In this document: piece after piece, positions 5,632-64,000 of the stretch | How the letters are laid out: each line of letters starts with the position of its first letter | Position numbering within the stretch: the stretch's first letter is position 1 | NCBI GenBank assembly: GCA_002269645.1 | Contig: NIVC01000827.1 | Coordinates: forward strand, 339,929 to 403,928 | Reading direction: 5' to 3' | Length of the DNA stretch: 64,000 bases | DNA from: Macrostomum lignano | Taxonomy: Eukaryota | Translations under genes and position numbers: made by a program | The notes under the pieces: model-generated | The model's input: only the letters and a program-made list of their open reading frames with translations | Database searches by the model: none | Told to the model about the DNA's origin: nothing

Positions 5632-5920
<289 letters not shown>

Positions 5921-29568: not shown

Positions 29569-30519
29569 CTAGCCCAAATAAAGGCTGCTTGCTCTGTAAA
29601 TGCAATGCAATGAACCCCGCATCCCAAATTTGAACATAAAACAAAGTGTAATATCTGGCAAGAAAATGTGCACAGTGATTCTTAAATATGCTCCAGGGCT
29701 ATATTGGGTGCAGCAACTAAGTAAGTGTGGATTTTTTGGCTTTTTTAACTCGTTATGATCTGAAATGGCAATAAGGTACGGGTGGCATGGATAGATGACA
29801 ACATGCGCTTTGCTCCCTCCTTTACCTCCTTTGCTGCCTTTCTCTTCTGAAGCTGGCCGATCAACTGGATCGCACGTGTGTGGAGCAAGAGCTTCTATGG
29901 TTCCATCAGCATGGCGGACTGCAGAGCCATGACAGTGCAGTGATAAACGCTTAGTGCAGCAATAGTACGTGTTGCCATTTTGGCGCGTTTTTTCATCCAT
30001 CAGATGGCCAAGGTCTCGTTGGGCATACTGCACTAGAAGGTCTTTTCCGTGACTGCATCCTGCACCTGTAAGAATCTCAAAGGGCTGGGGAGTTGGGCTG
30101 CGGGGCAGTGCAAGCTCTGCTGGAGGAATTTGAATGGATTCTTCCAGAGCTGGATCAGGGTCATTGAAATCTGGATACTGGTAAAGAAAATTTTCTGCTT
30201 GTGCCAGAATCAAATGCACTGGTTCTGGATTTTCAGCAGGCAGAGGAACAGCCGCTGGTCCAGAATTCGGGGCTTGTACATGTACCACTGCAGCATCTGC
30301 AGCTTGAGACACTGCTAAGTTACCTGCAGGAGCCCATCTATTGCATTGATTGCAAAGCCAGAAAAACTCACCGACATTTCTCATTACAGAATACTGATCG
30401 ATTGTGACGCAACTATCACATGCACGGTGCTGCCAATTCAAGCATTGAGAACACTCAATTGCTTCTTGTCCATCGCAAACTGGCTGCAGACAGACCACAC
30501 ATGGATATGCGCCAGCCAT
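29569..30519 (-). CDS. PHD finger + FLYWCH/WRKY-like zinc-ribbon ORF (N-terminal part of a MULE-type transposase; DDE domain absent)
   Basis: Complete C4HC3 pattern: CVVC...ECSQC..WQHRAC...WLCNQC; later GKDLLV...TYYCCTKR..CHG...PHTC. The 3' ~100 codons look non-coding. Confidence 0.75.
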   Translation of the reverse strand: MAGAYPCVVCLQPVCDGQEAIECSQCLNWQHRACDSCVTIDQYSVMRNVGEFFWLCNQCNRWAPAGNLAVSQAADAAVVHVQAPNSGPAAVPLPAENPEPVHLILAQAENFLYQYPDFNDPDPALEESIQIPPAELALPRSPTPQPFEILTGAGCSHGKDLLVQYAQRDLGHLMDEKTRQNGNTYYCCTKRLSLHCHGSAVRHADGTIEALAPHTCDPVDRPASEEKGSKGGKGGSKAHVVIYPCHPYLIAISDHNELKKPKNPHLLSCCTQYSPGAYLRITVHIFLPDITLCFMFKFGMRGSLHCIYRASSLYLG

Positions 30520-31378: not shown

Positions 31379-33574
31379 CCAAAGTTGCACATGTATGACT
31401 CTTAAGTTTTCTAAGATGTACATTTTAACTATTTGTACATTTTTCACTTAATTCATTTTAAACAAATGTAATTTTTGACAATATATGCAAGTCTAATACA
31501 TATGCACTTGTAACTGTTATGACTGTCGCCTACTTGACTGTCACTTTTTTGACTATCATTTTTTCAACTGTTGCCCTTTTAATTGTTATCTTTTTGATCT
31601 GTCATCCTTTTGATTTGTTCCCAATAAAAGGATTCAAAACTCAGTAAAAGAAAAAAGGTCTTAAGGTCTATAAAAAAAGGTCCAAGCTAATAAACCTATT
31701 GAACTAATTTACATTGTCATGATAATAATATAATATAATTGCACTATTTGCAATTAGGTTTATTAAAATCAAGTTTTTTGGCATGAAGGTAACATTTTAA
31801 ATGTTATGAAGGTCACTAAATTTTATCATTTAGTGGATCTAGCTAGAAGCTAGTATATTTTTTATCATACTTCCTATCATATTTATTATTTATTTATCAT
31901 ATTTTATCATACTTTGTGGCTATGATACCACACTTTACGCAGTAACATCAACTTCCTTTCAATGAAATATCATAAATATCAGGCTTGACAACTCTTGGTT
32001 GCCCATTTCAAAAAAATTGTAAAAACTTTTTTTACCAAAATAAATGCAGATTTCAAGTTATAGCATATACACCATATCTCACTGATAAATAGTCTATAAA
32101 TTTGTTCAACAAAATGACTCAAAATACCTCTTAGATAAAATGGCATTAAAAGTAAAGTCATTAGACAAAACAACCTGGAATCATATCATTTTGACTATCC
32201 TCTAGTCATTTATTATATCAAACTATTTGATATAGCTTGGTGCAATAATTTTTTGAAAAAAGTAGCAAAGATAAAATTTTATTTTGTGTATAGTGTTAAG
32301 GCCTATACAATTCATTTAATACAGTGCTAAATCATAAATAGTTGCAGACAAAAGGAAATGCAGTACAATTGAAAATATAAGAGATATAAAATTGAAGAAA
32401 TTTTAAGGAAAAGTGGGAAAAAGTAATTATAAACAAATAAAACTGAAAATAAAATAGTCCATAAATAACAATAGTTTATAATGTTAATAGTATATTCTAA
32501 TTTCTTACCAAATTAGGCATAGTAAAAAATTACTTTCCTTAATTTTGTTTTATATAGCTATTTTGTTGTTTGACCATTCTGCATATGGTCATTTTGATGG
32601 TACCCCACTTGTGGCAACTATATGAATTGGTATTTATGCATCTTTTTAATCCTTATTTAGGAATGTATCAAATACATACCAAAATGAAAATAGGTAATAG
32701 CTGATTACACTATGTCAATATGCATAAAAAACAAAGATTGTGCAGTTGAAAAATGGTCAAAAAAGGTCACTTATCTGAAAGACACTAAAAATGTTTTTAT
32801 GCCATAACATATGCTGAGCAAAATATGCCTAGACAAATACATACTAGAAAATTCTGGCATATAGGCCACCCTCTTTAGCATGGTTTAAAGAACTAAAAAA
32901 GTACCTAAGTGTTTTTTTGAGCTGATATGATTGCTTTGATCTTGAAAAGTATTTTATTTGATTAATAAGAATATATTTGCTATTTTTAGAATATAGAAAA
33001 TAAGAATATTGATGTAACTGCCCTTGGTGTCCATCCACTCTGCGGGGAGGTGAACGTATGACCATAGGGGGGGGGGTCAATGACTGTAGGCTGCCTATGA
33101 CTGGGCAATGACCTGACATACCTGCAGCACCAGACTGTCCCATCCACATGATTTATAGCTTTGATAGCGCTTTCGTGACCAGAGGGCCAAGTACCCACAT
33201 GGACCCCACCTGTAGCCAAGGTGCAATAGTTGGTCACTCGGTTGCCACCACTCTATTTGACCTGGCGCACCTAGATCTCACTACCAGACCTCTCGAGGCT
33301 AGAGCCCCGCCTGGATTGGTTACCAGGGGATTTAGGCTAACAGGGGAGACGCATGCAGCCGAGTACAGGGACTCGGCTTGGGGCATGATCGGGAACTCTG
33401 GGCTCAATCTGGAGGATTTCTCAGCAGGGGATCCTTTTTGGCTGTGAACGAGGCGGACTTGCGGTTTCAATTACTGAGAGTAGTGTGAGGCGAACATGTA
33501 CTAGCTATAGTTTAGATTGCTCAGGGCGAAGGGACGCGTAAGCATGGGTTGCAACCTTTCTGCTGCCATTCTGC

Positions 33575-33810
33575 GCCGAGACCCGCTACTTCCCTCTACT
33601 GCTCCCTCTACTTCGTCCAAGTGAACTGCTGCGACTTCGGCGACTCCAGCTGGCAGGCCACATCATCCGCGCCGAGTCGGACTGCCCGCAGGCCGCAGCC
33701 GGTGCAGGAGGTGCTGCTGCTAGCGCTGCAGGCACCCTACCGGCGCGGCAAGGCCCAAACTCGGCGTTTCGTCGACTGCCTGCTGGCCGATGCTGGCGCC
33801 CCGGATACTG
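33575..33810 (+). mobile_element. RTE-clade LINE 3' coding fragment
   Basis: ELLRLRRLQLAGHIIRAE..., then after a frameshift PVQEVLLLALQAPYRRGKAQTRRFVDCLLADAG, resembling RTE C-termini. Confidence 0.7.
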
Positions 33811-33989
33811 GCGCCAGACAGCATACTTTGTTATTGTTGTTGTTTCCCACACACGAACCCGCAGCAGGCACACACAGGCAAGCTTTGCACGGGGAGAGGC
33901 CATCAGCTTACCCAAACTTCCTTATGCTTTGCCACCCAGGGAGAAAGGCTTAGTAAACCATGAATGAAATGATGGTGAAAGTGTGAATA

Positions 33990-34191
33990 ATGAGGAGTTT
34001 AGTAATGGTTAATAATTAGGCCCTTAGACATAATAAACAGGCAATTAGGCGGCTTCACTATTAAGTAAAATACAGCAAAGATACGGTAACACAATTGGCT
34101 CAGCTCTCTCATCAAGCAATGGGAAATAAGCAAACCCTGGATAAGCAAAGGCAATTGGAGCACAAATCAGTATAGGAACTTACCGGCAGCT

Positions 34192-34244
<53 letters not shown>

Positions 34245-35364
34245 CGGAGTGACTGAGAACGGCTGTTGACTGCGGACAGGCAGGACGTGAAGCAGCGATG
34301 CGCTGAAGCGACGAGGCGCTGATCTAGTTCAGGCTGAGGATGCTGGGCGGTATCAGACCGCGGGCCAGCGGATGAGCTAAAGGAACTTGGCGGTATCAGA
34401 ACGCGGACCGGCAGAGGTTCGTTCTATAGACAATTGGGTCAGATCAACGTCTGACAGCAAGTCCAAAGAAGCACCACTTCGGAACAAGTGCGTATAGTCG
34501 AAGCGTCTGAGGGTTCTCACGCCGAAAACCGCTCCCTTAAATAGCCTTCCCAGCCGCCGCTCCGAGGTCGTTTCCATGACTCTCTCTCTCTGATTGGCTG
34601 CCGGAGAAATGACGTCAGAATGAGTCATGATAAGAAGCATGAGAACGCCATAGCAACATAAGAAATGGGGAAATTGCGCAATCCGGAGGTGGGGTGGGGG
34701 ATAATTGGCGCAGCAGGATGTCTAAGAAGTGTTGCGCAAGCAAACATTGAGAACAATGGGGCGCAGGCCGAGAACAAAGGAAATGGAAATCGGGGATAAT
34801 TGAGGAGAACAGAGAACAATAAAAAGAGAAAATCTGGGAAAATGTGATAATTAGGTGCGAAAACGAGAACAATAGAAGCAGTGGGGTGGGTGTCATATGA
34901 AAAATCTTGAGAAGAGAACAATAGCATGAGAAACGGTTGCGCAAGAGGGCGTGATGAGTCATCGGGTGAAGGAGGGGTCAGAAGGCTTGCGTCACCGCTT
35001 GGGATTCTAAAAGGAGATGGGGCGACGGTGAGCACAAGAAGTACTGTAATTAAGCACGGGATGAGAAGGGGACAGTGCAAGAAAAACATGCTAAAACAGG
35101 GTGAGAAAAACATGAGAAGTACATGAGAAAAGGGGAGGAGTGCATGAGAAGTGGGGAGGCGGGCGAGGGGCACGTAGGGCTCCGGAAAGGCAAGTGTGGC
35201 TGAGTGGGAGACGGAACAGAGACAGCAGGGGCGCAACAGAGCGGGAGTCAGTCAGCCTGGTCAGGGACCCGGCCCAGTCTCGACAGCTCTGCCCAGTAGG
35301 TGCACAGGGATCGGGGATGCTTCAAAAAATTTCCCTCACGATCCCGCGACCAGAGCTGGTTACA
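33990..35364 (-). mobile_element. LTR-like element (minus strand); left boundary uncertain
   Basis: Starts TGTAACC on the minus strand at 35364; repeat-rich U3-like tract; TGAGTCA at 34621, TGACGTCA at 34610, CCAATC at ~34595, TATTTAA at ~34540; contains (GA)n at 34196-34240. No PBS or TSD seen. Confidence 0.45.
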
Positions 35365-35757
35365 TCAATATATTCTATAGAATAAGATTTAATATTCATT
35401 TCAAGAGTTGTAACTATAGGATAAATATATATCTTTAGTTATGTTATAAAGCATCTATTTTCTAGGTTTGAATATATTGTTAATGAAGGTTTAACTAATA
35501 AATATGATGAAAAAAGATAATAAATAACAAGCCTTTTATAAAATGGTTTATTTAAAAGTTAGTTTAAATAGCTTATAAAGCAAGGCTTATAAAAACTATT
35601 TTCTACTATTTTTTCTTATGGTCTACGTAATTCTAGTTTCCTTGACATACGTTCAACTATTTCTTGACTTTCTACTATTTGTGTCTTCTGACTTATATTA
35701 GAAATATTGTTTATCAATATTGTCGTATTTTTATAAAGATTTGAACCTGATTTTTAG

Positions 35758-38700
35758 CCATTAGAAGAATCCGCCGCTTTCATCCAAGAGATTGATCCTT
35801 CAAAGCCTCTACCTGTTGATATTGAAGCTTTGCAAGCATTGAAATTTGAATCTGAGGATCCAGATGGTAAGAATTTTATTTTTTTTCTATTAGTTTTCTA
35901 CTACAGACAGAGACAGAGACAGAACATTTTTTAATCGGGCGTTTATGCACACACTGTGCTTTTGGGGTTGGTTGGTGCCATAATATTTGACAAACGGGTC
36001 AATAATTGCCACGGTCATTATATTTACCAAAGCTGACATAAACTTGCGCATTGCAGAATCCGCTCGCAGCTACAAAGAGGAGGGCAATTATCATTTCAAG
36101 CGTCGAGAATTTCAGTCGGCCAAGGAGAACTACACGGAAGGCCTGAAATCTGGCTGCAAAGATTCCGAAATGTTGGCAGTCTTGTACACCAACAGGGCTG
36201 CCGCCGACTTCCATCTGAAGAATTATGGTAGCTGTTATAAAGATTGCGCCAAGGCGAAGCAGCTTAAGCCTGATCATTACCGGTGAGAAACTGATTTTCT
36301 ATTTATGTTCTGTTCTGCTAAGTCTATGATATGTTCACTCTATCTATTCCGCATCTATCAACAATCTATCCCGCATCTATCAACAATCTATCGACCATCC
36401 ATTAACAATCTATATCTATAATCTATCAACAATCTATACCCCATCTATCCCGCATATATCAACAATGTATCCCACATCTATCAACAATCTATCCTTCATA
36501 TATCAACAATGTATCCTGAATCTATTAACAATCTATCGACCATCTATCAACAATCTATATCTATAATCTATCGACAATCTATCCCCTATCTATCCCGCAT
36601 CTATCAACAATCTATCGACCATCTATCAATAGTCTATATCTACAATCTATCAACAATCCATCCCGCATCTATCAACAATCCATCCCGCATCTATCAACAA
36701 TCCATCCCGCATCTATCAACAATCCATCCCGCATCTATCAACAATCCATCCCGCATCTATTAACAATCCATCCCGCATCTATTAACAATCCATCCCGCAT
36801 CTTCAACAATCCACCCCGCATCTATCAACAATCCATCCCGCATCTTCAACAATCCATCCCGCATCTATCAACAATCCATCCCGCATCTATCAACAATCCA
36901 TCCCGCATCTATCAACAATCCATCCCGCATCTATCAACAATCCATCCCGCATCTATCAACAATCCATCCCGCATCTATCAACAATCCATCCCGCATCTAT
37001 CAACAATCCACCCGCATCTATCAACAATCCATCCCGCATCTATCAACAATCCATCCCGCATCTATCAACAATCCATCCCGCATCTATCAACAATCTATCC
37101 CGCATCTATCAACAATCCATCCCGCATCTATCAACAATCCATCCCGCATCTATCAACAATCCATCCCGCATCTATTAACAATCCATCCCGCATCTTCAAC
37201 AATCCACCCCGCATCTATCAACAATCCATCCCGCATCTTCAACAATCCATCCCGCATCTATCAACAATCCATCCCGCATCTATCAACAATCCATCCCGCA
37301 TCTATCAACAATCCATCCCGCATCTATCAACAATCCATCCCGCATCTATCAACAATCCATCCCGCATCTATCAACAATCCATCCCGCATCTATCAACAAT
37401 CCACCCCGCATCTATCAACAATCCATCCCGCATCTATCAACAATCCATCCCGCATCTATCAACAATCCATCCCGCATCTATCAACAATCTATCCCGCATC
37501 TATCAACAATCCATCCCGCATCTATCAACAATCCATCCCGCATCTATCAACAATATATCCCGCATCTATCAACAATCTATCCCGCATCTATCAACAATCT
37601 ATCGACCATCTATCAACAATCTATATCTATAATCTATCAACAATCTATACCCCATCTATCCCGCATATATCAACAATGTATCCCGCATCTATCAACAATC
37701 TATCCCGCATCTATCAACAATCCATCCCGCATCTATCAACAATCCATCCCGCATCTATCAACAATCCATCCCGCATCTATCCAGAGCTCACGAGCGCGGC
37801 GCCCGAGCCCTACTGTCGTTGGAACGCCACGCCGACTGCGCCGCCTGGTGCGACGAAGCCCTCAGCCGGTGGGTCGCCGACCCGGAGCTTCTGCGCCTCT
37901 CCAGCCAGGCCCGCGCCGTCGCCGAGGCCAGCGCCGCCAAAGCGCGCCGCGAAGCCGCCGTTGGCAGGCGCGCCGAGCGCCAACTTGCCGGCGTGGCGGC
38001 CGCCCTCGCTCGCCGAGGCGTCCAAATCCGGCCGGGCACCGGGCGGCTGGAGATGCCCGACGATGCCAAAGTGGAGTTCGCGGCTGGCGACGCCGATGGC
38101 AACGGCGTGCTGCGCTATCCTGTGCTGCTGCTGTATCCTGAGTTTGGCCAGACTGATTTCCTGCGCGGAGTTGACGAGACAGCTAGCCTGGCTGAGGTTC
38201 GTGTTTCGATGGCTATTGTCTTGTTTACACCCATCAGCCCGTTGAAAACGATACCGTGACAAGAGTCGCTAAGAGTCATTTCAAACAGCTCACTAGTGAC
38301 TCTTGTAAGTCGGGCGACTCTTGTGACTTTTTAACAACTCAATCGCGTCACATGAGTTTTAGAATGGCCAGAGTCGCGAAAAAGCCGTCCAAGGATGCTG
38401 GCGTTTAACTTTCTACTAACTTAGTAGGCTAGTTAGAGTGCAATTAAAGTTCAGTAGGCTAAAACTGAGTGTTCATTACCCAATGAAAAGTCCAATAGAG
38501 TCGTTTCAGACGCGTTGCAGATGACACAGGTCAAATTAGAAAGAAGTGATTCTAAACGACTCTTAAAAACGACGAGATGTCCCAGTACAAGTCGCCAAAA
38601 AGTTCGCAGAAGAGGTGCTTTAGCGTCACTGTAAAATCGTTAGTGCATCACTTTTGAGTCGATGACCATGCATTTTCTATTCGCCCAGAAATGTCGATCC

Positions 38701-41700
38701 AGCAGTCTGTTTAAGGCCGATAGTAAGGACTCTGTAACGCGTCCAGAACGCCTCAGAAGTGACGCACTAACGATTGTACAGTGACGCAAAAGCGCTTATT
38801 CTGCGACTTTTTAGCGACTGCAGAACGCCGCTGAAACGCCGGAAATGTGGCTCTAATGCGACTCTACAACGCCTCGCTCAAATACGATCTTACGGCCCCA
38901 TAATCGTTACACCGTTGCCCCAGAGTCACTAGAGTCGCGCCAGAATCACTTGCGGCGCCCCAGAGTCGCAGACAAAACGCTTCAAAGCGACTATGGGACG
39001 CTTCTTGGCCTAGGTACCGTTTTCATCGGGCAGGGCTAATCCTCTTTTGAGGGCACGGAGAGTGTACATGTGTACATGCAACTTTTTAACAGTTTTGTCA
39101 TGAGCGCGTCACGTGAGTTTTACGAGCTAGAAATTATATACGAGTCCCGAAAGAACGACCAGGAATGGTTGTGCTGGCGCTTAACTTTTGCTAGATATGT
39201 GACTGATTCATCAACTTGCTTCAAACACAACCCAGTGACTCTATAGCTACTCTGGCACGCCTCAGATACGACTCCACCGCCTCAGAGTGGTTTCAGAGTC
39301 GCCAGGCAATAAGACACCTTAAATTCACTGTTAGGCGACTTTTTGACGACTTTTGGCGACTTTTACCGTGACTTCTCATCGTTTTAAAGTCGTCTAATAG
39401 AGTCACTTCTTTCCTAATTTACCTGTGTCATCTGCAACGACTCTGGGGCGGCGCAAGTGCCAGAGTGAGACGCTTCTTGGCCAGTGTTGCCACTGAGCAT
39501 TGTGACAAAAAAACGCTGACAGAAAAAAATAACACAGGGCATTTTCATCGTAGATATTACTAATATATTGTAACACCAATGATTAACAACAACGATAACA
39601 GTTGAAGACCAACCCCACCTAAAAATACCAAAGTGATAATTAACCAGTAAAGAGACTGAATAACAATTGGAATGACAACTCCTTTTCAATGTTCAATGTT
39701 CAATAGTGTAGCAGTCATAGTATGAGCGTAGTGAGTAGTCAATTTTTTTCTTTTTCGGAACATTCGGGAGACGAACAAGCGAAGCATGCTCCGCCTGTCG
39801 TTTCAATCTGGCAGCTTCCTCGGCTGTGCGTTGGATGACATTGTCCATGGCACGCTGTTCGATTACCAGCCGATCCGATGCAAATTGTGTCAGGCGCACA
39901 GCAACGTCCTGGTATTTTCCTTGCGCCTTGCGCAACCTCTCAATCGCTAGCTGAACTTCTCTTTCAGCCTCAAGGCACTCTGCAGCTGTTGCAGCCTTTT
40001 TAGCGACCTGTTTTTTTTGTTCTTCAGCAAGGCGCTCCAATGCAGTTTTTCGTTCGGCATCCTGTAGTTTTGTAGGGAGAAATAATAAATAAAAGGGATT
40101 ACTGCAAATCTTAGAAGTTAGCTCACTTAATTATTACCTTTTCAGCTTCTAGTCGCATTTTCTCCTGTTCCGCCTCAGCTGATTTACGAATAGCCGCCAG
40201 CTCATTTGCCTTCTTTTCGGCAGCCATATGCTGCTTGTATTGTGAGCTTGCCTTTAAAGCGGCCTGGATGAGCTCCTCGGGAATTGGCACATTTTTCGGC
40301 TTGAAGCTCCGAGCGCACAGAAAGCTGCGTGCCAAGAGTGAGTCGCGAAGTCTTTCGTCCGAGAGCCGATTTCGCTTTGAATTAACGCTAACATCATGCG
40401 ACTTTCCAATAAACCGCTCCGCATCTGCGTTCCCGTGAAATAGAGTACAGCACGCAGATGCAAGACGAGAAAGACGCGGGTACTTTCCTGTGTCTGCAGC
40501 CTTCCTCCAACCGCAGGCGATGTCACGATTGTCAGGCAAGAGGAGCTCACCACTTTTGGTTCGCAGATTCAGTAGCCTGACCTCAGAGGAAGCTTTTTGG
40601 CGATAAAAGTCACAGAATCTTCCTCAATTTCCCTTGAGAAGTCAAGGAACTTCATACTTCGCAGAATTTTCTTCTTCAGGGGCAGCTTTTCCTGCAAGTA
40701 TGCTGCCACCGCAATGTAAAATTGTTTAAAGCGATAAATGAGTGGCTTCTGCCGATCTTGCAGATTGTTTTGCTGCCCAATGGCAATACTAGACATAGGC
40801 AAGTGCAGGCTTTGGTTTTTGAAGTCAACGGAGACAACAGATTTTCTCTCGAAGGCAGATGGCTGCATAAACTGAATAGCTATCGACTCCAGAAGGGCGA
40901 TCAGCTCAGCATGCGATCGATGAATAAGAACTGTGCAGCTTTCTTGAAATGCGCTCTCAAAGCGGCTAGCAAGCTTCAGGGCGTGGATCGCAAAGCGTAC
41001 GCAAACTATGGTGTCTGGGTCTTGAAAGGCAGATCGGAGTCTTCGCATGCGCTTCGAATCGTCTGTGGACTGCGAAAGAAAAGCTGTCAGAGGAATCCAC
41101 TGTTCGATTATTCGCTCCAAACAGGGCAATAGAATTAGCCATCTTAACTCGACATTCCGCTTGAAAGCAAGTTGTGCAACGCCAATTTCTTGTTGGAGAG
41201 CCTTAAACTCTTTTCTGCGAGTGATGCTTCTGCTGAAACAAGCAAAAATGTCGTCGGCAAGATCGGAAACTTCCGAAAGATGGTTGTCACAAGCTTTGCG
41301 ATATGCGTTTGCAACAGTGTGGAGAGTGCAGCTTCCTACATCAATGAGATGCTCAAGCTCAGGAGTTTCACGTAGGATGGCACCAACTCCGGCATGTTCA
41401 CCAATCATTACGCTACACCCATCAGAAAAATTGCCAATCCACTTAGACAACGGCAGCTTGCTGTCCATTACACACTGACGAATAGCCTGAGCACATGAAG
41501 CAGCATCGAGACGTTCCAGTGGAAGTTGGTCAAGCATTTCAACCACGACTTTGCCCTCAGAGTTCAAATACCGCACGCAAATCATCATGAGACCATCACT
41601 CTCATCATAACTGATTGAATAGAAGCCAAATGATGACTCCACCTCCATGGCTTCTGCGCCCACAATTGACTCTGTTATTTGCTGCTTTTACATAGGGGAC

Positions 41701-44114
41701 AATAGCAAAAGTCAGCAAGTAGGCTTGCTTGGTGCGGCCACAAGAAAAGCCTGCTGCAATTTTTGAGTCTGGAAACATGGCTCTGAATAAATCAGGCGTT
41801 TCGTCTTCAGTGTTGAAGCTTTTCGACTTATACGCAGAGTTCCATACCCAGCGAATTTCAGCTAAGGTATTTTGCGCCGATTTGTTATCATTAGCAGATG
41901 AAGCACTATGCTTTGTGAAGAAAGCTGAGATTGATTTCTGCTGAAGTGCTGCAGCAGCATTCGACTCGTGAATTTTGGCTTTCATGTGCTGCTTGATTGC
42001 ACCAATGCCTCCACTTCCAACAAAAATTGGTCGATCGCACACATTGCAATATCCGTCAGTGTCAGAGTTGCCCTTTGTTAGCCATTTCTCGGCATTCAAA
42101 GTGGTAATCCAACTACTGGTAGGATCAAAGTTGGTCTGCCGAATGCGTTTAGAGTCAGTTGACTCAATGTTCGTGCTCATGCCTGCAGAGTCACTTTTTG
42201 TCTTTGCTGAGCTATTTGTGAATCAGTTAATCACTGGAATGCAAAATAAAAACAAAATAAAATGTTATAAATGTGTTTAAATTGTATGAAAAAAGATAAA
42301 TGATGAGAAACAATAAGACAATGTCATATTTTCAAGAATGGAGCTAAAATTACTGTTTATTTTAGTCTTTTTACTAATAAATACAGTAAAAATTTTAGGG
42401 TCATAATTATTCATTGAAAAAACGCCAGAAAAAGGAATTCAGCAAATAAAAACACAAAACGCCAAAAAACGCCAGTGTTAAAAAACGCCAAGAGTGGCAA
42501 CACTGTTCTTGGCTAAGGTACCGTTTGCATCGGCTAATCCATGGTTTTTGTGCATGGGTTAGCGTGGGGTAATCAACATCAATTATTCTGGTCGAATAGT
42601 CTCTGCAGTGTAACATGACAGTGATCCGAGTCAAAGACGACTTCAGTAAAACTGCACTTCTACGGCTATCATTGATTTTAGTATTTTACTGCAGTATTTA
42701 ACTGCCTGTTTACTGGGCATTAAGCGCTCACTGGATTTCCTTACCCACCTCTGGCAGCTCGTCTTAATCAGCCGCTGCTTGGAATCTGGCAGCACTCTGT
42801 ATGGCTTACATACCAGCAGAACAGTACTGTAAATTGTACAGTAGCTTTTCGCAAAACGATCTGTAAACTTGCAGAATTCTAAACTGCAAATTGCGCATAC
42901 GCGTGAGACCACAAATAATTAGCGTAAATTAAGTCGAAGAGCAGATTGGCATGTGATGTAAGTACATAATAGATAAATAGCAGATGAAAATGTTTTTCCT
43001 TTAACTTTTAACACTTTAAACTTTATTTAGCTTGGCAAACTCAGAGAACGCAAAAAAACACAAAACAACAGAACATGTTAAACAGCATTGGAAAACGTTG
43101 GAAAATGGTACTTAGAAATGAGAAAAATGTGTAAAAAGGTAAGCAAAATAGCAGACAGAAGAAGCTAAAATTTTCGCCTTAGCCATGAGAATACCCATGT
43201 CAATACCTTAAAGGCGACCAACCAAGGAGCTTCAGTGTGGAGGTGGTACCCCACCTACCCTACAGTCCTAACTTGCCCCCTACGACTTCTAGCTGTTCCT
43301 CAACATAAAGAACTTGAAGAAACTGCCTACAAGAACGACTCCAAGGTCAAGTAGGCAGTCGTCCGGGTATTCAACGCCATGTCCAAGAAGGAATTCGCCA
43401 CGGCCATCCACAAGTAGTGGAAGATGCGGTGGTTGATGAACAAGGAGAAAAAATGTCCGTAAAAAACTGTAAAAAACTCCGTAAAAAGTGTTGTTCGTAA
43501 AAACACCAATAAGAAAATGCGATAAAATAGTGAGGCAGTGTTTCCTTCTGTAAATAAGTATGAAACTAGAATTCAAATTAGCGCGAACAATCTTCCCACA
43601 CGCTTTTTCTACAATCGTTATCCATTCACGCAACTTTAGGTGTTCGTTGCGCTTGCGCGCGCTCAGAATCATTCAACCATGCCAGACTCCCACCCCATGT
43701 TTTATTATAGAGAAAGAGCTTTGTGGAGAGAAAAGCAACCATTCCCTTCCCCGATAGCAATATGTCCTTGCCTAGCCTTTCTTGGCTCATTTTACCTAGC
43801 CAGATTTAATAAACGTTTTGTCCAATCTACCTATTAATACCTGAGTTCCTCTGTTATTTCTCAGTTTAGAAAGATCTGCCAAATCCCTTTACATTCCTGC
43901 ACCACTCCCCGGCGAAATCATCCATCAGCCTTAGCCACCCGAATTTACTCGCTTCTACAATCCTCCCTTAACTCCCAAACGCCCTGTAAACCCTACCTGA
44001 AGTCCACCAGAAGTTACTCTGAAACTCACCTGAAGCCCCATGAAAGTCACCTTAAGCTTAGGAATCCACCTGAAGTGTCCTAATTCCCTATGAAATCGTG
44101 CTAATCCCCGTTCC

Positions 44115-44174
<60 letters not shown>

Positions 44175-50100: not shown

Positions 50101-51475
50101 ACGGAACGAATAAGTCTCGGAGCTTTCTTTGAGCTTAGAACTTCGTTTGTTTTACGCCCCGTGGGCAAAGAACTCAAGATAGGCTATTGCTTATGGATCA
50201 ACGAATAAGTAGGATGTAGTTTATTTATTAGATATTATTTAATGTCAGTTATTAATTCGCAAGCAGTTTGGGATAGCTGATTAAACGACTGAGATGAATT
50301 GCGACGGCACCGGGGTGCTAAATTATAATAGAAAACTCTCTGATTAATGAACTTATTAAACTTGGTTAACAGTCGAAGCAAGTAAATAATTGGGTGCACG
50401 AATCAGCAAAGGAAAAGGTAAAGGAAGTAGAGGAACGGGGGAACTGGGAATGAAATTGCACATGAAACAAGGGGGGGTTTAAATAGAGACAGCAAGCAGT
50501 TCCGCGGGTGGGAGCAGCTGCTGGAAGCCACGGTGGGCACACTGGTCACAGCATGGGCAGTAACAAAAAAACCCGGGACAATAGTGCAGTTTAACAAACT
50601 TCCACAAAAGGATAATATTTATCAACGCGTGGAACATGCGGTGGAGCGATGTCTGGGAAACCCAAAACAAGCCACACAGGGGAAACTTCAGCGGACAGCG
50701 CGGGGACGACTAATTGCAAAATTAACAGTTAATTAGAGTTTCAATTTACAGTGGCATCCCGCCTGCCACACATGTTAAACTGCAAAAACAAAGCTTTTAA
50801 AATCAAATTTGTTTATAAAAACAATTTTCATTTATTTAATTCAACCGCTTAGTGGAAGTAAAATTAGTTCTTATGCTACACATAATTGTCTTTTTGCTTT
50901 GGTCTTCGAATTAAGAGGCACTACGCCTTCAGCTTGTCTTAAAGAGCTTTCCCAGTAAATGCGCAGTAATTAAGTTTTGCCGATGTGCACATGCAGTATG
51001 TCACTGCTGTTTTACTTAGGTTCCGAGACAGTAAAAAATACCTAAGTAAAATACTGCTGTTCTACTGCAGTTTGATAAGAATATTTTTTGGGGACAGAGA
51101 TGTTGATGGTTGGTACGCTCGTAGATGTGGGTTGAGATGGCTATCATTTTAAATTCAATGTTTCCAATTAGCGCATAATTAAATTATCTCAAGGTGGCGG
51201 CAACCGTGTTTGATCCTAGTCAGCCACCGGCAGCCTGGAACTCAGCTAAAGCCTACAATCCAGACAGTGCTCTCTTCTACCTAGACTGCAGCAGCACCTC
51301 CGATTCAGCGGCAACATCAAAGGCTAAACCTGAGACGCTTGATAAACGCCTAACCTTGGCCCAGGTGTTAAAACGACCAGAGGCTGCTCTGACTGGCTCT
51401 GTACTGCTGTTGACTGTACTGCGGGCGGGACCTTATCACGACCGCTGGCTTAAGGAGTGGTGGGATTCGCAGTGA
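35758..51475 (+). CDS. TTC4: TTC4/Cns1 TPR Hsp70/Hsp90 co-chaperone; exons 35758-35866, 36057-36282, 37785-38196, 51194-51475; no ATG in the first exon found
   Basis: IEALQALKFE; ARSYKEEGNYHFK...YTEGL...LYTNRAAA (TPR); WCDEAL; LRYPVLLLYPEFGQTDFL; C-terminal PPAAWNSAKAY; intron phases 1, 2, 0 join cleanly (1029 nt). Confidence 0.92.
36345..37780. repeat. 22-bp minisatellite (ATCCATCCCGCATCTATCAACA) filling TTC4 intron 2
   Basis: About 60 copies; the last unit runs directly into the CCAG acceptor. Confidence 0.96.
38237..39031. mobile_element. Non-autonomous TIR element (GCCCG[T/A]TGAAAACG[A/G]TACC ends) rich in GAGTCGC/GCGACTC motifs; a second diverged copy at ~39090-39481 + 42514-42540
   Basis: Inverted ends at 38237 and 39031; internal similarity between 38320-38420 and 39090-39190; TSD unclear. 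Confidence 0.65.
39482..42505 (-). mobile_element. Near full-length hAT transposon, 3024 bp; transposase with two frame disruptions
   Basis: TIR CAGTGTTGCCACT / AGTGGCAACACTG; perfect 8-bp TSD TTCTTGGC; BED-like CNVC..H..H finger, FPDSKIA..FSCGRTK, SISYDES, SDG, CTLH, HGNADAERF dimerisation region (ORFs 42180-41605, 41663-40569, 40539-40123, 40040-39693). Confidence 0.93.
43240..43430 (+). mobile_element. Mariner transposase C-terminal relic
   Basis: VVPHLPYSPNLAPYDF*LF resembles the HPPYSPDLAPSDF motif; contains stop codons. Confidence 0.75.
44546..47769 (-). mobile_element. Degenerate CACTA/EnSpm transposon: Tnp2-type transposase (47769-~46060) plus second ORF(s) (~45975-44546); termini not located
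   Basis: FHFDGVDL, KPD..FL..FVDEL, ICDTPARA, CTKC, DPMHLILLG, FLLLHVA, NVHSLAH...AFPFEN; multiple frameshifts; a duplicate ORF2 fragment at ~42740-42810. Confidence 0.88.
49915..50750 (-). mobile_element. Solo-LTR-like sequence, with a block related to the U5 of the 6247 LTR
   Basis: Minus-strand start TGTAAAT; CTATTTAAAC TATA-like box at ~50480; TGGCAGC.CTAC..CTACTGAGAGT block resembles 7128-7157. Boundaries and TSD not confirmed. Confidence 0.35.
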
Positions 51476-51858
51476 CTGGGAAATCTGACTAATTTTATGA
51501 TCATTTATGATGAATTTTGATATCTTGTAAACTGGGGTTGTTACCAATTTGTAAGCGGTGATTGTCTGTCTGTTTGTCTTCAAGTCGGCGCACGTTTGTT
51601 AATAAAATATTATTTTTTCGATGAACTTGTTTATTTTCTTTATTCATTTGAATAAGGTCATCTTTATATATCTATATATCTTAGCTATCTTTATAACTAA
51701 GATAGGAGTAAGGTCAGATTCCCTTGTGCTGAGGGTGTATATACCTGAGGATTTATAGTCAGGGACCGCTGTACACCTTAGTTATAGACAGGCTAGCATG
51801 TCTCTGATAGTTACTTTTGGTTAACAAAGACACAGTCACCATGACTGATTGATACCTA

Positions 51859-52419
51859 CGAGGGGTGTCCAAAAGTAGTGGGAATTTTCAACATAACTCA
51901 TAGTTGGATTCAGATAGATAAACAGCGCTGAGGTTAAATGAAAGCGGCTTTATCTATCTATAACATACTTTTTGAATTTTGTAAATACCTACCGGCATTC
52001 AGAAGTTATGTCCAATCTAGTACCGTGCCCAAATTCCAAAATTCCAAAACAACAAAACAACATTCCAAAACAACAAAACATGACTATCGATCTGTAAGAG
52101 CATATCTATTGAAGTTCTTAACACGATAGTTAGTCACACTCAAATATCCTTGTCGTTAGGGATGGAGACCTTTACGTTCGTAGTCACCGTTGCAGTTGAC
52201 GTTCTTCTGCCAGCCAAGTCAGACAAGTATGGTCGGTAAGGCAGAAGTTCAAACTTCATGCTTTGAATTGCCTCTACTGTCCTTGAAACCGTGTGTGGTT
52301 GTGAATTGTCTTGGTGGAGCATCGGTGGATTGATCACGGTACTAGATTGGTATTCAAAAAGTATGTTATAGATACTATGAGTTAGGTTGAAAATTCCCAC
52401 TACTTTTGGACACCCCTCG
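51859..52419 (-). mobile_element. 561-bp internally deleted mariner
   Basis: TIR CGAGGGGTGTCCAAAAGTAGTGGGAATTTTCAAC at both ends; left TA; remnants LHQDNSQPHT and LLPYRPYLSDLA. Confidence 0.9.
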
Positions 52420-52457
52420 AAAATTGTTAACAAAGACACAGTCACCTGACTGATTGA

Positions 52458-53021
52458 TTGCTGGATTGGCCATCCATCCGTCGCTTATTATTCTACCCAG
52501 CTGTCACCAAGTCGCTGACGTGGCGACTGCTTGGCCTGTCTGACTGGTACAACCGTATCGATGAGCATCTCGTGCTGGGCGCGCTGCCATTGGCTAGAGA
52601 ATTCCAGTCTGTAGCAAAATCTGAGAGCATCAAAGCTGTACTGAGTATAAACGAACCGCACGAGGTTAAGCCGGCTTGGGTTGTTGGGGAGAAAGAGTGC
52701 CGCAGGCTGGGCCTAGCTCGGATGCAACTATCTGTACCAGATTTTGGCGGTCATTCGCCAAGCGCTAGACAGTTGCAGAAATGCTGCGATTTTATCGAAT
52801 CAACGGTTGTTAAGGGCGGCAGCGTGTACTTGCACTGCAGAGCTGGTAGGACTCGAAGCGGCACAGTGGCCGCGGCTTATCTAATGCGGCGCCATCGGTC
52901 CCTGGCGCCAGTGGATGCGTGCGATAGATTGCGCGCCAAACGGCCCAGCTTACTGTTGAATCGGCCTCAGCTGGATGCGCTGCACGAATTCTGGAGATTA
53001 GAGCAGGCTAGAGAAAGATGA
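52458..53021 (+). CDS. PTPMT1: PTPMT1 mitochondrial phosphatidylglycerophosphatase (dual-specificity phosphatase fold), single exon, no in-frame ATG
   Basis: RRLLFYP; WYNRIDEHLVLGALP; NEPHE; VPDF; catalytic loop VYLHCRAGRTRSGT (HCxxGxxRS); stop 53019-53021. Confidence 0.9.
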   Translation: MLDWPSIRRLLFYPAVTKSLTWRLLGLSDWYNRIDEHLVLGALPLAREFQSVAKSESIKAVLSINEPHEVKPAWVVGEKECRRLGLARMQLSVPDFGGHSPSARQLQKCCDFIESTVVKGGSVYLHCRAGRTRSGTVAAAYLMRRHRSLAPVDACDRLRAKRPSLLLNRPQLDALHEFWRLEQARER

Positions 53022-53438: not shown

Positions 53439-56400
53439 GAGAATTCAAAGCCGTATACAGCCTTGCTGCTGTTTCGTTTCTTTTTTATATTTTTGCCACA
53501 AACTGGCTATCTGCATCCGGATGAGTTTATGCAGTCAATTGAGATTTCTGCGGGTAAGAAATATATTTGTTTTCTTCCCTCCCACTAGCGCACGAACCGC
53601 CCCCTCAATTTATTTCCCTGCCCGCTAGCACACTAACCACCCCCTCAATTTATTTCTCTGCCCGCTAGTGCACTAACCACCCCCCTCAATTTATTTCTCT
53701 GCCCGCTTGCACACTAACCACCCCCCCCCTCAGTTTATTTCCCTGCCCGCTAGCGCACTAACCACCCCCCTCAATTTATTTCTCTGCCCGCTTGCACACT
53801 AACCACCCCCCTCAGTTTATTTCCCTGCCCGCTAGCGCACTAACCACCCCCCTTAATTTATTTCTCTGGCCGCTTGCACACTAACCACCCCCCTTAATTT
53901 ATTTCTCTGACCATTTTTATGACCAACCGACCAGCTACCAAGCTAGCAAGCTGTGTAACCGTATGTATTTCTATCTTTGAAAATCGCAGGCGACCTCCTC
54001 GGTGTCCGAACCAGCTCGCCACCCTGGGAGTTCACCGTTGATCGTCCAATCCGTAGCGCCGCCATACTCCATCTGTTCTATCACGGCCCGCTACTATTAT
54101 TTAAACATCTGCTAGTGGACGGTTTCTCTTGGTACGTTGACGCCTACTTTGTTGTGATAGTCACCCGGCTGTCTATAGCAGTTTTGTCGCTAGCAAATGA
54201 CGCTATGGTAGCATTACTGGCTAGAGAGCTCGGTCTGGACACGTTTCGCTGCCTGTTCCTCTACTCTTCATCGTACATAGTCATGGTGCACGGTACTAGA
54301 ACTCTGAGCAATGCCATTGAGTCGAGTCTTCTAGCTATTGTTTTTATCTGCCTACTGTTTGCCTTGAATGCCTATTCCGCGCCTGGCAATAGTCGTCATA
54401 CACTAGTAAAGGTGCTCCTATCAACAGCCGGAATTGTCACCGCTATCGGGGTTATGAATCGGCCAACTTTTGTCGCCTTCGCCGCTGTGCCCTATCTCTA
54501 CACAGCCTGGCGTTGCGCCCGCTCGCTAGTCGATCCTATTGGCGCCTGTTTCAATTTTGGCGCCACAATTCTGGCCGCATTTAGCGCCGCATTTGTCTCG
54601 TTAGTGTTGTACGATACGCTGACTTTTAATCCGACATTTGCTAGCAGATTCGCCTCGTTGGGTATGGACGAATTTCTAACCGTGAATGGCGCTTTCGATT
54701 TCCTGTCAGATTTTGCGCGATCGGCTGTTGTAACACCCTGGAACTTTGTTAGGTAGGCAGTGCCTGTTTTCCAATGATATTTATGCAGTTCACAATATCC
54801 TAGGAACCTATCACACTCCGCTTTCCTACCCCTTATACAGCCACCTCACTCCGCTTTCCTACCCCTTAAGCAGCCACCTCACTCCGCTTTCCTACCCTTT
54901 ATGCACCCACCTCACTCCGCTTTCCTACCCTTTATGCACCCACCTCACTCCGCTTTCCTACCCTTTATGCACCCACCTCACTCCGCTTTCCTACCCTTAT
55001 GCACCCACCTCACTCCGCTTTCCTAACCCCCTGTCGTAACCCGGGTCGGTTCGGGTGCCCAGCCCAAATAAAATACGGTGGTACCTGCAGGCGTTGTGAC
55101 GCTCTGCCAATATGGTATTACTGCTGACAGGCGTTATGACGCTCTGAGTACCAGGTTGCTCGTTCTGGCGTGATGACGCTCAGAACTAGCGTTGCCCCCA
55201 GAGGTGTTGCGACACTCTGGTGCTTATACAGTGGGTATACAGTATAAGTAAAAATAAAGTATGATATACAGGGTCCGCTCTCCTGGCGTTATGACGCTTT
55301 GGCGAGAATTTACTGTAATCTCTCAAGCTTCCCAGGAAAGACTGTGTTAAAACAGGCGGCTTACCGGTAGCCGAGTTATGAGATGCGCGTTTGCCCTGTG
55401 GCCGAGCTATCAGATGCACGTGTACCCTTTTTGGGTCGTTGTTGATTTTATTTGACGCGTTGAACAACTTGAGACTTTGTTAAAGTCACAGTACGAAGGA
55501 GCAAGAAAATTCCGAAGAAAAAAAGGCGAGTCAGAAAAACCTGGAGCGCAAATTAATATTAAATACCACCACAGGCTTAGGTTTAAGGGGGGGGCAGATG
55601 GCTTCACCGGCTGAGCCCACAAAAATTAGAGCAAAATAACAAACGCACTGGTCAGCCAATCAAAACCCCGCCTAGGGGGGGGGGGCGCTCCCACGCTAAA
55701 GCCGGCCCGGCCGCAGCCAACCAGCCCTGAGCACGGGGCAGGGGACACGGCTAGGGAGGGGCACGCGCAAAGCCCGGCCGCCAGCCAGACCCTGCCACGC
55801 CCGCCAACCCCCTTGCCAGCCCCAAAGTGCATCGCGCCCTGCAAACCGACAAGGGCGCATGCACTACACCCTTATGCACCCATCTCACTCCGCTTTCCTA
55901 CCCCTTATGCAGCCACCTCACTCTGCTTTCCTACCCCCTTATGCACCCACCTCACTCTGCTTTCCTACCCCTTATGCACCCACCTCAGTCCGCTTTCCTA
56001 CCCCCTTATGCACCCACTTCACTCTGCTTTCCTACCCCTTATGCACCCACCTCAGTCCGCTTTCCTACCCCCTTATGCACCCACTTCACTCTGCTTTCCT
56101 ACCCCCTTATGCACCCACCTCAGTCCGCTTTCCTACCCCCTTATGCACCCACCTCACTTCGCTTTATTTCCACCCTTACCTCACCATTTCTCTTTCCTCA
56201 GCTACAACTCTCAATCGGAGAACCTGGCTCAACACGGTACACACCCTCGCTGGCTTCACCTGATCAATCTGGCTTTGTTGCTAGGCCCAGCTGCCCCAGT
56301 ATTCGTCCGTCACGCCTGGGCTACTCTACGACAGTCGGCTCAGCAGCAGCAGCAACAGCAGCAGCAGCTCAGTAAAGCTATTGTTCTCGCCTGTCTAGTA

Positions 56401-63900: not shown

Positions 63901-64000
63901 TTACAGACAGGAGAGGGAGAGTTACAGACAGGAGAGGGAGAGTTACAGACAGGAGAGGGAGAGATACAGACAGGAGAGGGAGAGATACAGACAGGAGAGG
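60968..64000. repeat. 21-bp GA-rich minisatellite (ACAGACAGGAGAGGGAGAGAT), more than 3 kb, runs off the window
   Basis: About 140 copies with variant units. Confidence 0.97.

What the first reader, a model, noticed from the sequence alone, without database searches (positions are those of the whole stretch)
35365..35866. TTC4 first exon shows the same ATG-less, phase-0 acceptor pattern
Seen: an AT-rich ~390-nt outron-like tract ends in ttttag|CCA TTA GAA GAA TCC. The acceptor TAG is itself an in-frame stop, and exon 1 has no ATG. Adding an AUG gives M-PLEESAAFIQEID... (343 aa). Two independent genes in one cluster with the same geometry make chance less likely (one in three per gene for phase 0).
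Basis: partly seen in the sequence, partly recalled or inferred. Interest (0 to 1): 0.75.

Follow-up and report, generated by a model that had tools for sequence, protein, structure and literature searches.

The report
Spliced leader supplies TTC4 start codon
In the flatworm Macrostomum lignano the co-chaperone gene TTC4 has no start codon of its own, because the short leader RNA spliced onto its messenger ends in AUG and supplies one; this mechanism has been known in flatworms since 2006, so the finding is a real but ordinary example.

Summary
The window is M. lignano Mlig_3_7 contig NIVC01000827.1, and the gene is TTC4 copy Mlig020912.g2. A 392-nt tract of 22% GC ends in ttttag|CCATTAGAAG at 35758. 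The TAG is an in-frame stop. The 109-nt exon has no in-frame ATG, and the four exons encode 342 aa (343 with an added Met).

- The M. lignano spliced leader (SL) ends in ATG.
- Published tables tag Mlig020912.g3 and g1 as TRANSSPLICED with a length of 1170 nt. That length fits a 5' end at 35758 and a 3' end 10 nt past the AATAAA.
- Both rival micro-exons are broken in the two paralogous loci, while the acceptor and exon are intact.
- The first in-frame Met (codon 75) would delete the conserved N-terminal motif and TPR1.

One correction: this "first exon" is the ancestral exon 2. A cestode, a mollusc and a hemichordate have a phase-0 intron at exactly this codon, preceded by an ATG-bearing exon of 15-54 codons. 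Phase 0 is therefore inherited, not a 1-in-3 coincidence. M. lignano appears to have replaced exon 1 with the SL AUG.

I did not see the junction reads or any proof of initiation. This is a known mechanism (Cheng et al. 2006) and of low interest.

The parts
33006..35371 (.). GC-rich (53%) 2.37-kb insertion. It is bounded by a perfect 13-bp inverted repeat (ATATTGATGTAAC at 33006-33018 and GTTACATCAATAT at 35359-35371) and sits inside AT-rich DNA.
   Evidence: The block is present and collinear in all three paralogous loci. Pfam found nothing in its ORFs.
35372..35757 (+). AT-rich (22% GC) outron-like tract. It ends in the polypyrimidine/AG acceptor ctgatttttag.
   Evidence: A 1588-nt de novo transcript is 418 nt longer than the 1170-nt mature form. 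That difference suggests a precursor starting near 35340; this is inference.
35755..35757 (+). TAG. Its AG is the 3' splice site, and the triplet is an in-frame stop that closes the reading frame upstream.
   Evidence: It is identical in paralogs g1 and g3.
35758..35866 (+). First exon of the mature TTC4 mRNA: 109 nt, phase 0 at its 5' end and phase 1 at its 3' end, with no in-frame ATG. It encodes PLEESAAFIQEIDPSKPLPVDIEALQALKFESEDPD and is orthologous to exon 2 of other animals.
36057..36282 (+). TTC4 exon 2 (TPR1 and TPR2). It contains the first in-frame Met, at codon 75.
37785..38196 (+). TTC4 exon 3.
51194..51616 (+). TTC4 last exon. The CDS runs to the stop TGA at 51473-51475. The AATAAA is at 51601-51606, and the inferred poly(A) site is at about 51616.
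52464..53021 (+). Single-exon DSPc (PTPMT1-like) phosphatase gene, the next gene on the same strand. It is a possible second gene of an operon.
53439..53553 (+). First exon of the GT22 (Alg9-like) mannosyltransferase gene. The acceptor is ttatttcag|GAGAAT in phase 0, and there is no start codon. An SL AUG would give MENSKPYTALLLFRF...
   Evidence: Residues 6-37 align to positions 3-32 of PF03901. The annotated 5'-partial CDS starts exactly at the acceptor in g1 and g2.

Best explanation
TTC4 (Mlig020912) pre-mRNA is transcribed with an AT-rich outron of about 0.4 kb. The spliceosome joins the 35-nt spliced leader (...TTATTGCATG) to the acceptor at 35757|35758 and discards the outron together with its in-frame TAG. 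The leader's terminal AUG then sits directly in frame with CCA UUA GAA... and acts as the initiator. The product is a 343-aa TTC4/Cns1 co-chaperone that begins M-PLEESAAF.

The acceptor is the ancestral intron-1 3' splice site. The ancestral ATG-bearing exon 1 has been lost or bypassed, and the SL AUG stands in for it.

Shown here or in published data:
- the geometry of the acceptor, stop and exon;
- the SL sequence;
- the published trans-spliced status of this gene;
- the orthology of the exon to exon 2 of other animals.

Inferred:
- the exact junction;
- use of the SL AUG by ribosomes;
- loss of exon 1.
For: - The SL ends in ATG. The flatworm SL AUG is a documented initiator: it is in frame in 28% of S. 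mansoni trans-spliced mRNAs, and more than 40 cDNAs need it. The Macrostomum genome paper calls the terminal ATG a start codon.
- Mlig020912.g3 and g1 are tagged TRANSSPLICED with length 1170 nt. The tag means that SL-containing reads map at the transcript start. Counting 1170 nt from 35758 ends at 51616, 10 nt after the AATAAA. Starts at 35791, 35797 or 36057 would end 43, 49 or 119 nt past it.
- Among all AG sites from 35650 to 35800, only 35758 and 35791 give a full-length ORF from the SL AUG.
- Exon 1 is clearly coding. It matches mollusc and fluke N-termini at E = 4e-10 to 1e-7, starting at 35761. Yet it has no ATG and is closed upstream by TAG.
- The first in-frame Met is codon 75, while TPR1 starts at residue 39.
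- The acceptor and exon are identical in the three paralogs apart from one synonymous change. The upstream tract differs at 13-22 of 392 positions.
- All three NCBI models are 5'-partial, as expected from a pipeline that trims the SL, ATG included, before ORF calling.
- TTC4 is in the 'Neoblast, stringent' class, and 85% of that class are trans-spliced.
Against: - No SL-exon junction read was seen here. The tag and the length are indirect evidence for the exact site.
- Orthologs in a cestode, a mollusc and a hemichordate carry an ATG-bearing exon spliced to exactly this acceptor. A cis isoform is therefore conceivable, and flatworm acceptors are often shared between cis- and trans-splicing.
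- The older de novo transcript RNA1509_12784 (1588 nt) is typed 5UTR_CDS_3UTR and has no TRANSSPLICED tag.
- The NCBI CDS starts (35797-equivalent in g1 and g3; 36059 in the window copy g2) do not coincide with 35758.
- g2 itself is not listed in the table that carries the tag.
- The acceptor is TTTTAG and does not match the most enriched SL-acceptor motif [T/C]TNCAG. That motif is found at only 44% of sites.
Confidence: 0.85

Rival explanations
1. The acceptor at 35758 is mainly a cis acceptor. An unannotated upstream exon 1, like the 15-54-codon exon 1 of other animals, supplies the ATG, and SL use is minor or absent.
For: The intron position and phase are conserved with ATG-bearing exon 1 in Sparganum, Elysia and Saccoglossus. 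Every homolog has 15-55 additional N-terminal residues. The 1588-nt de novo transcript carries no TRANSSPLICED tag. A few ATG...GT phase-0 candidates inside the GC-rich block are intact in all copies, for example 34926-35027.
Against: The published tag is TRANSSPLICED, and the 1170-nt length leaves no room for another exon. All three NCBI models and the UniProt model lack such an exon. The only two candidates in the AT tract are broken in g1 and g3. The W-containing candidate 32712-32765 loses its ATG in g1. No homology was found upstream.
Confidence: 0.07
2. The mRNA is SL trans-spliced, but at another site (35790|35791, or the exon-2 acceptor at 36056|36057), or it is translated from Met75. 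The protein would then be shorter than 343 aa.
For: 35791 is the only other in-frame AG site and would give M-IDPSKPL (332 aa). The NCBI CDS of g1 and g3 starts 6 nt after it, and that of g2 starts at the exon-2 acceptor. The UniProt model starts at Met75.
Against: The length of 1170 nt fits 35758 and not the other sites. caagag|AT has a poor pyrimidine tract. An SL at exon 2 puts the AUG out of frame. The residues AAFIQEID upstream of 35791 match the HPAFLKEID motif that is conserved from molluscs to flukes. A Met75 start would remove that motif and TPR1.
Confidence: 0.06
3. The window copy (g2) is a decaying duplicate that is not processed like g1 and g3.
For: g2 is absent from the TRANSSPLICED table row. 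Its NCBI model starts at exon 2. Its downstream DSPc neighbour has CTG where g1 and g3 have ATG.
Against: The g2 ORF is intact, and its protein is identical to g3 over the shared length. The acceptor and exon 1 are the same as in g1 and g3 apart from one synonymous base. Reads cannot distinguish the copies here, so absence from the table is weak evidence.
Confidence: 0.02

Closest known systems
SL-AUG-dependent mRNAs of Schistosoma mansoni (Cheng, Cohen, Ndegwa & Davis 2006, J Biol Chem 281:733; known to me through PMC12582326 and PMC9851317)
   Same: The leader's 3'-terminal AUG is joined in frame to an exon that has no start codon of its own, and it serves as the initiator methionine.
   Different: The species differs (a free-living macrostomorph) and so does the gene. 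Here the acceptor can also be shown to be an ancestral cis acceptor (intron 1, phase 0). Initiation has not been tested for this gene.
slORFs: ORFs created by spliced-leader addition (slORFfinder, PMC9851317)
   Same: The reading frame begins inside the leader sequence.
   Different: Those cases were defined by ribosome footprints in nematodes, Oikopleura and trypanosomes, often with non-AUG codons. Here the evidence is an AUG and orthology, with no footprints.
Outron/SL1 trans-splicing of first genes and operon resolution in C. elegans (Conrad 1993 and Blumenthal, as cited in PMC8629364)
   Same: An AT-rich outron has an unpaired 3' splice site, and downstream same-strand genes lie close by (989 nt and 418 nt).
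   Different: The nematode SL1 carries no terminal AUG, so it does not supply the start codon.
TTC4 / Cns1 / Dpit47 Hsp90 co-chaperone family
   Same: TPR repeats plus a C-terminal Wheel domain (PF18972), and 37-40% identity to fluke and mollusc TTC4.
   Different: The M. lignano protein lacks the 15-54-residue N-terminal tail, which often ends in W-E-x and is encoded by exon 1 elsewhere.

Membership tests
Flatworm mRNAs whose initiator AUG is donated by the spliced leader | The organism's SL RNA exon ends in AUG, immediately before its GU donor. | tested here: met
   The M. lignano SL is ...TTATTGCATG followed by GTAAG (PMC8629364). The same is noted for other Macrostomum species.
Flatworm mRNAs whose initiator AUG is donated by the spliced leader | The mRNA is SL trans-spliced at the acceptor in question (an SL-exon junction in RNA). 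| tested here: inconclusive
   A published table tags Mlig020912.g3 and g1 as TRANSSPLICED, and the 1170-nt length fits 35758. The junction reads themselves could not be inspected, and the window copy g2 is not listed.
Flatworm mRNAs whose initiator AUG is donated by the spliced leader | The SL AUG is in frame with the main ORF, with no intervening stop. | tested here: met
   The acceptor is in phase 0, and AUG plus CCA UUA... reads through 343 codons.
Flatworm mRNAs whose initiator AUG is donated by the spliced leader | No usable cis start codon: none in the first exon, and the frame is closed upstream. | tested here: met
   Exon 1 has no in-frame ATG, TAG lies at 35755-35757, and the first in-frame Met is codon 75, inside the TPR region.
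Flatworm mRNAs whose initiator AUG is donated by the spliced leader | Ribosomes initiate at the SL AUG. | not testable with these tools
   This needs N-terminal proteomics, ribosome profiling or a reporter.
TTC4/Cns1 co-chaperone family | TPR domain followed by the Cns1/TTC4 Wheel domain. | tested here: met
   PF18972 at residues 218-338 (E = 1.2e-10), plus weaker TPR_2 and TPR_1 matches that fall below Pfam's cut-offs. The best homologs are TTC4 of flukes, tapeworms, molluscs and vertebrates.
M. lignano SL-resolved operon (criteria of Ustyantsev & Berezikov 2021) | Adjacent same-strand genes with a repeat-adjusted spacing under 1 kb. | tested here: met
   The gap from the TTC4 stop (51475) to the DSPc start (52464) is 989 nt, of which 561 nt is a foldback element. 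The gap from the DSPc stop (53021) to the GT22 acceptor (53439) is 418 nt.
M. lignano SL-resolved operon (criteria of Ustyantsev & Berezikov 2021) | The downstream genes are SL trans-spliced. | not tested
   The neighbours are absent from the tables held. The only hint is that the GT22 annotated 5' end coincides with its AG acceptor.

The most novel reading that the evidence does not exclude
The SL acceptor of M. lignano TTC4 is the ancient intron-1 3' splice site. Its position and phase 0 are the same in a hemichordate, a mollusc and a cestode. M. lignano would then have discarded the ancestral ATG-bearing exon 1, along with its 15-54-residue tail, and let the leader's AUG replace it.

If this is general, phase-0 first introns would be the predisposed route by which flatworm genes become dependent on the SL AUG. 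That rule could be tested genome-wide.
Probability: 0.45. Interest if true: 0.4.

Novelty: new member of a known kind. Interest (0 to 1): 0.2.

Why it matters
The practical point is annotation. The three M. lignano TTC4 proteins in GenBank are labelled 'partial' and the UniProt model starts at Met75. The likely full protein is M plus 342 aa. The same correction probably applies to the neighbouring GT22 gene and to many other 5'-partial models in this genome, because the annotation pipeline trims the leader together with its ATG.

There is also an evolutionary point. The case gives a clean example of an SL acceptor that can be traced to a conserved cis intron. It shows how a leader ending in AUG can make a 5' coding exon dispensable.

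The mechanism itself is not new.

Tried and rejected
- **Exact look-ups.** I looked up M+342 aa, the 342-aa form, the M-IDPSK form and M-DWPSIRR in the 15-billion-protein collection. None is present, so no transcript-derived protein shows the N-terminus.
- **Genomic loci of flatworm orthologs.** Four flatworm orthologs (P0007, P0009, P0012, P0014) were not on record. I used Sparganum, Elysia and Saccoglossus instead.
- **Cestode transcript.** The Logan cestode transcript L004 has its own ATG and no leader, so it is uninformative.
- **Search for an upstream exon.** tblastn with 17 homolog N-termini against window 1-36100 found homology only from 35761 onward. I enumerated 135 ATG...GT phase-0 candidates and ran a W-E/acidic-tail pattern search. 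Nothing convincing emerged. The one W-containing candidate (32712-32765) is broken in g1.
- **SL RNA gene in the window.** None was found, and Rfam gave no hit.
- **Acceptor motif [T/C]TNCAG.** TTC4 does not match it (ttttag) and GT22 does (tttcag). It does not discriminate, because only 44% of SL sites carry it.
- **Relic leader upstream of the DSPc start.** The local-alignment shuffle gave p of about 0.12. The end-anchored empirical test gave p of about 0.01. This is too weak to claim.
- **GC-rich block as a LINE.** From memory, an ORF in the block resembles a LINE ORF2 tail. Pfam found nothing, and I ran no further search on it.
- **NCBI CDS starts as evidence for the 5' end.** I rejected these. 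They vary between copies (0, +18, +22 and +39 nt from the nearest acceptor, or a whole exon), which fits coverage-limited transcript ends under end-to-end read mapping.
Full report
**Where the window comes from**

Window 26059-61475 is 100% identical to GenBank contig NIVC01000827.1 of the Macrostomum lignano Mlig_3_7 assembly. Window position equals contig position minus 339,928. The gene is TTC4 copy BOX15_Mlig020912g2 (PAA76370.1). Two paralogous loci hold the other copies: g1 on L001 and g3 on L002. All three loci are collinear for at least 6 kb upstream of the gene, including the GC-rich block next to the finding.

**The observation**

The tract 35366-35757 is 392 nt at 22% GC. It ends in cctgatttttag|CCATTAGAAGAATCC. 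The triplet 35755-35757 is TAG, in frame with the exon. The exon 35758-35866 is 109 nt long, has the donor GATG|gtaaga, and contains no in-frame ATG.

Together with exons 36057-36282, 37785-38196 and 51194-51475, the CDS is 1029 nt. That is 342 codons plus a stop, so a prepended Met gives 343 aa. The protein has TPR repeats and the Cns1/TTC4 Wheel domain. Its best matches are TTC4 proteins of flukes, tapeworms, molluscs and vertebrates.

**Is exon 1 translated, and from where?**

tblastn with the N-termini of 17 homologs finds homology that begins at 35761, one codon after the acceptor. The E-values run from 4e-10 to 1e-7 for molluscs and flukes. The sequence LEESAAFIQEIDPSKPLPVDIEALQALKFESEDP aligns with L(K/Q)NHP(A/C)F(L/I)KEID..KPL....E.L.ALKYESEDP. 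So the exon is coding.

The frame is closed upstream by TAG. The first in-frame Met is codon 75, after the start of TPR1 at residue 39. A start codon must therefore be added by splicing.

Among all AG dinucleotides between 35650 and 35800, only two give a full-length ORF from a leader AUG. Splicing at 35758 gives 343 aa, and splicing at 35791 gives 332 aa.

**The leader**

The M. lignano SL is CGGTCTCTTACTGCGAAGACTCAATTTATTGCATG, followed by a GTAAG donor (PMC8629364). All reported flatworm leaders end in AUG. Cheng et al. 2006 showed that this AUG can act as the initiator. It is in frame in 28% of S. mansoni trans-spliced mRNAs and is required by more than 40 cDNAs. The Macrostomum genome paper explicitly calls the terminal ATG a translation start codon.

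**Transcript evidence from the literature**

The Mlig_3_7 annotation pipeline trims the leader from reads and transcripts. It then cuts transcripts at SL sites and calls ORFs with TransDecoder (PMC5730564). Genes that depend on the leader AUG must therefore come out as 5'-partial. All three TTC4 proteins in GenBank are indeed 'partial'.

The supplementary table of Grudniewska et al. 2018 lists cluster MligTCv3c-11698.1. The cluster is assigned to human TTC4, falls in the class 'Neoblast, stringent', and carries the feature TRANSSPLICED. Its entry reads 'Mlig020912.g3 {Length: 1170} {TRANSSPLICED}' and also includes g1 (PMC5816591). The tag means that SL-containing reads map at the beginning of the transcript.

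The length can be checked against the sequence. Exons 1-3 sum to 747 nt. A 1170-nt transcript starting at 35758 therefore ends at 51616, 10 nt after the only AATAAA (51601-51606). Starting at 35791, 35797 or 36057 would put the end 43, 49 or 119 nt past that signal. This supports 35758 as the SL site, but it is an inference and not a junction read.

An older de novo transcript, RNA1509_12784, is 1588 nt long, typed 5UTR_CDS_3UTR and carries no TRANSSPLICED tag (PMC5173321). It is 418 nt longer than the mature form, about the size of the AT-rich tract. I read it as an outron-retaining precursor that starts near 35340, at the right edge of the GC-rich block. This too is inference.

An alignment of the three paralogous loci shows that both candidates are broken in the other two copies.
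- ATGGTCTAC|GTAATT (35618) carries a 4-bp deletion in g1 and g3 that removes the GT donor.
- ATGGTTTATTTAAAA|GTTAGT (35543) has lost its ATG (AAG) in both, and its donor is changed as well.

These are the only ATG...GT phase-0 candidates in the AT tract. By contrast, the acceptor and exon 1 are identical in all three copies apart from one synonymous change. The 392-nt tract differs at 22 positions from g1 and 13 from g3. Candidates further upstream either lie inside the GC-rich block and have no resemblance to TTC4, or are broken in one copy.

**Is an upstream exon expected?**

Yes, ancestrally.
- In the mollusc Elysia chlorotica, exon 1 (54 codons) ends ...GTG GAA|gtaagg. Exon 2 starts ttgttcag|GAG CTC CAG AAT CAT CCA GCA TTC. 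Exon 2 is 109 nt long, phase 0 at its 5' end and phase 1 at its 3' end, which is exactly the size and phases of the M. lignano 'exon 1'.
- In the hemichordate Saccoglossus, exon 1 ends ...TGG GAA AAG|gtttgt and exon 2 starts tttttag|GAA ATA GAG AAT GTT CCA CTC TTT.
- In the cestode Sparganum proliferum, a 15-codon exon 1 (ATG...GAG AAG|gtaagg) is followed by a 43-nt intron and then GAT TTG CGC AGT CAT CCG GCA TTC.

In all three species the intron lies in phase 0, exactly seven codons before the conserved Phe. The next intron is in phase 1, just before x-A-x-S-Y-K-E-E-G-N.

The M. lignano acceptor is therefore the ancient intron-1 acceptor, and its phase 0 is inherited. The 'one in three per gene' argument does not apply to TTC4. 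What is special is that the ATG-bearing exon 1 is missing. That exon has 15-54 codons, is poorly conserved and often ends in W-E-x. The leader AUG can replace it because the intron happened to be in phase 0.

**The neighbouring block**

The GC-rich block next to the finding shows no LTR features. It spans 33006-35371 and is bounded by a perfect 13-bp inverted repeat inside AT-rich DNA. It is present in all three paralogous loci, so it predates the duplications. Whether its insertion removed exon 1 cannot be told.

**The second gene**

The GT22 mannosyltransferase downstream has the acceptor ttatttcag|GAGAAT at 53438|53439, in phase 0. Its only Met lies inside the conserved HPDEFMQS motif. Residues 6-37 of its first exon align to positions 3-32 of PF03901, so M-ENSKPY... 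is a natural N-terminus. In g1 and g2 the annotated 5'-partial CDS starts exactly at this acceptor.

TTC4, the DSPc phosphatase and GT22 lie on one strand with gaps of 989 nt and 418 nt. Of the 989 nt, 561 nt is a foldback element. These spacings meet the published distance criterion for an operon. Their trans-splicing status was not available.

**What remains open**

- I saw no junction read and no evidence of initiation.
- The NCBI CDS starts do not coincide with 35758. They fall at the 35797-equivalent in g1 and g3 and at 36059 in g2. I attribute this to coverage-limited 5' ends under end-to-end read mapping, but the g2 start at the exon-2 acceptor could also reflect a second, out-of-frame SL site.
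- A minor cis-spliced isoform cannot be excluded.

**Verdict**

This is a real feature that was correctly read. The mechanism has been known since 2006, and the gene is already flagged as trans-spliced in published tables. The added value is a corrected protein N-terminus and the demonstration that the SL acceptor is a co-opted ancestral cis acceptor.

Noticed in passing
window 53439-53553: The GT22 (Alg9-like) mannosyltransferase gene has the same geometry: acceptor ttatttcag|GAGAAT in phase 0 and no usable ATG. The family domain starts at residue 6 of the exon. The annotated 5'-partial CDS begins exactly at the acceptor in g1 and g2, and 18 nt downstream in g3.
   Followed up: partly
window 52442-53021; L001 14175-14735; L002 27392-27952: The single-exon DSPc (PTPMT1-like) gene has a genomic ATG just before GATTGG in g1 and g3 (ttcATG|GATTGG), but CTG in the window copy (ttgCTG|GATTGG). 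All three GenBank proteins are 'partial' and begin right after that codon. The 18 nt before it (GACTGATTGATTCATG) loosely resemble the leader's 3' end. The end-anchored empirical p is about 0.01 and the local shuffle p about 0.12. This may be a relic of a retroposed SL-mRNA or may be chance.
   Followed up: partly
window 51820-52446: A foldback element at 51859-52419 has 46-nt terminal inverted repeats (98% complementary). It is flanked by an exact 21-nt direct repeat, GTTAACAAAGACACAGTCACC (51820-51840 and 52426-52446). The repeat duplicates the likely DSPc acceptor region (acacag|TCACC).
   Followed up: partly
window 33006-35371: A GC-rich 2.37-kb insertion is bounded by a perfect 13-bp inverted repeat and shared by all three paralogous loci. 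The 1588-nt de novo TTC4 transcript would start about 20-30 nt inside its right end, so it may carry the promoter. From memory, one ORF resembles a LINE ORF2 tail; Pfam found nothing.
   Followed up: partly
window 36057-36059: The GenBank model of the window copy (PAA76370.1) starts at the exon-2 acceptor. If that reflects a second SL site, the leader AUG would be out of frame and would open a 31-codon ORF (MNPLAATKRR...).
   Followed up: no
window 36342-37781: Intron 2 of TTC4 consists almost entirely of a 22-nt minisatellite (ATCTATCAACAATCCATCCCGC, about 64 copies).
   Followed up: no
window 38798-50732: Intron 3 of TTC4 is 13.0 kb here, and the g3 gene span is similarly long (about 16 kb), but in g1 the whole gene spans only 3.2 kb. 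The 11.9-kb extra segment carries several minus-strand ORFs (for example 40569-41663, 364 aa) with no Pfam match. No long terminal repeats of either orientation were detected.
   Followed up: partly
window 60962-64000 and many other sites: A 21-nt purine-rich tandem array (GATACAGACAGGAGAGGGAGA) has about 145 copies and runs off the window end. The tandem-repeat scan (39 rows, several describing the same array) lists many further minisatellite arrays across the window.
   Followed up: no
window 29569-30519, minus strand: An unannotated 316-aa ATG-initiated ORF has a weak PHD-finger match (E = 0.0018, below the Pfam cut-off).
   Followed up: no
L007 about 5725-5760: The GenBank TTC4 model of Sparganum proliferum (P0017) reads intron 2 as coding, which inserts GKFYPEFDRL. 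The transcript-derived protein of a related cestode (P0013) shows that this intron is spliced out.
   Followed up: no
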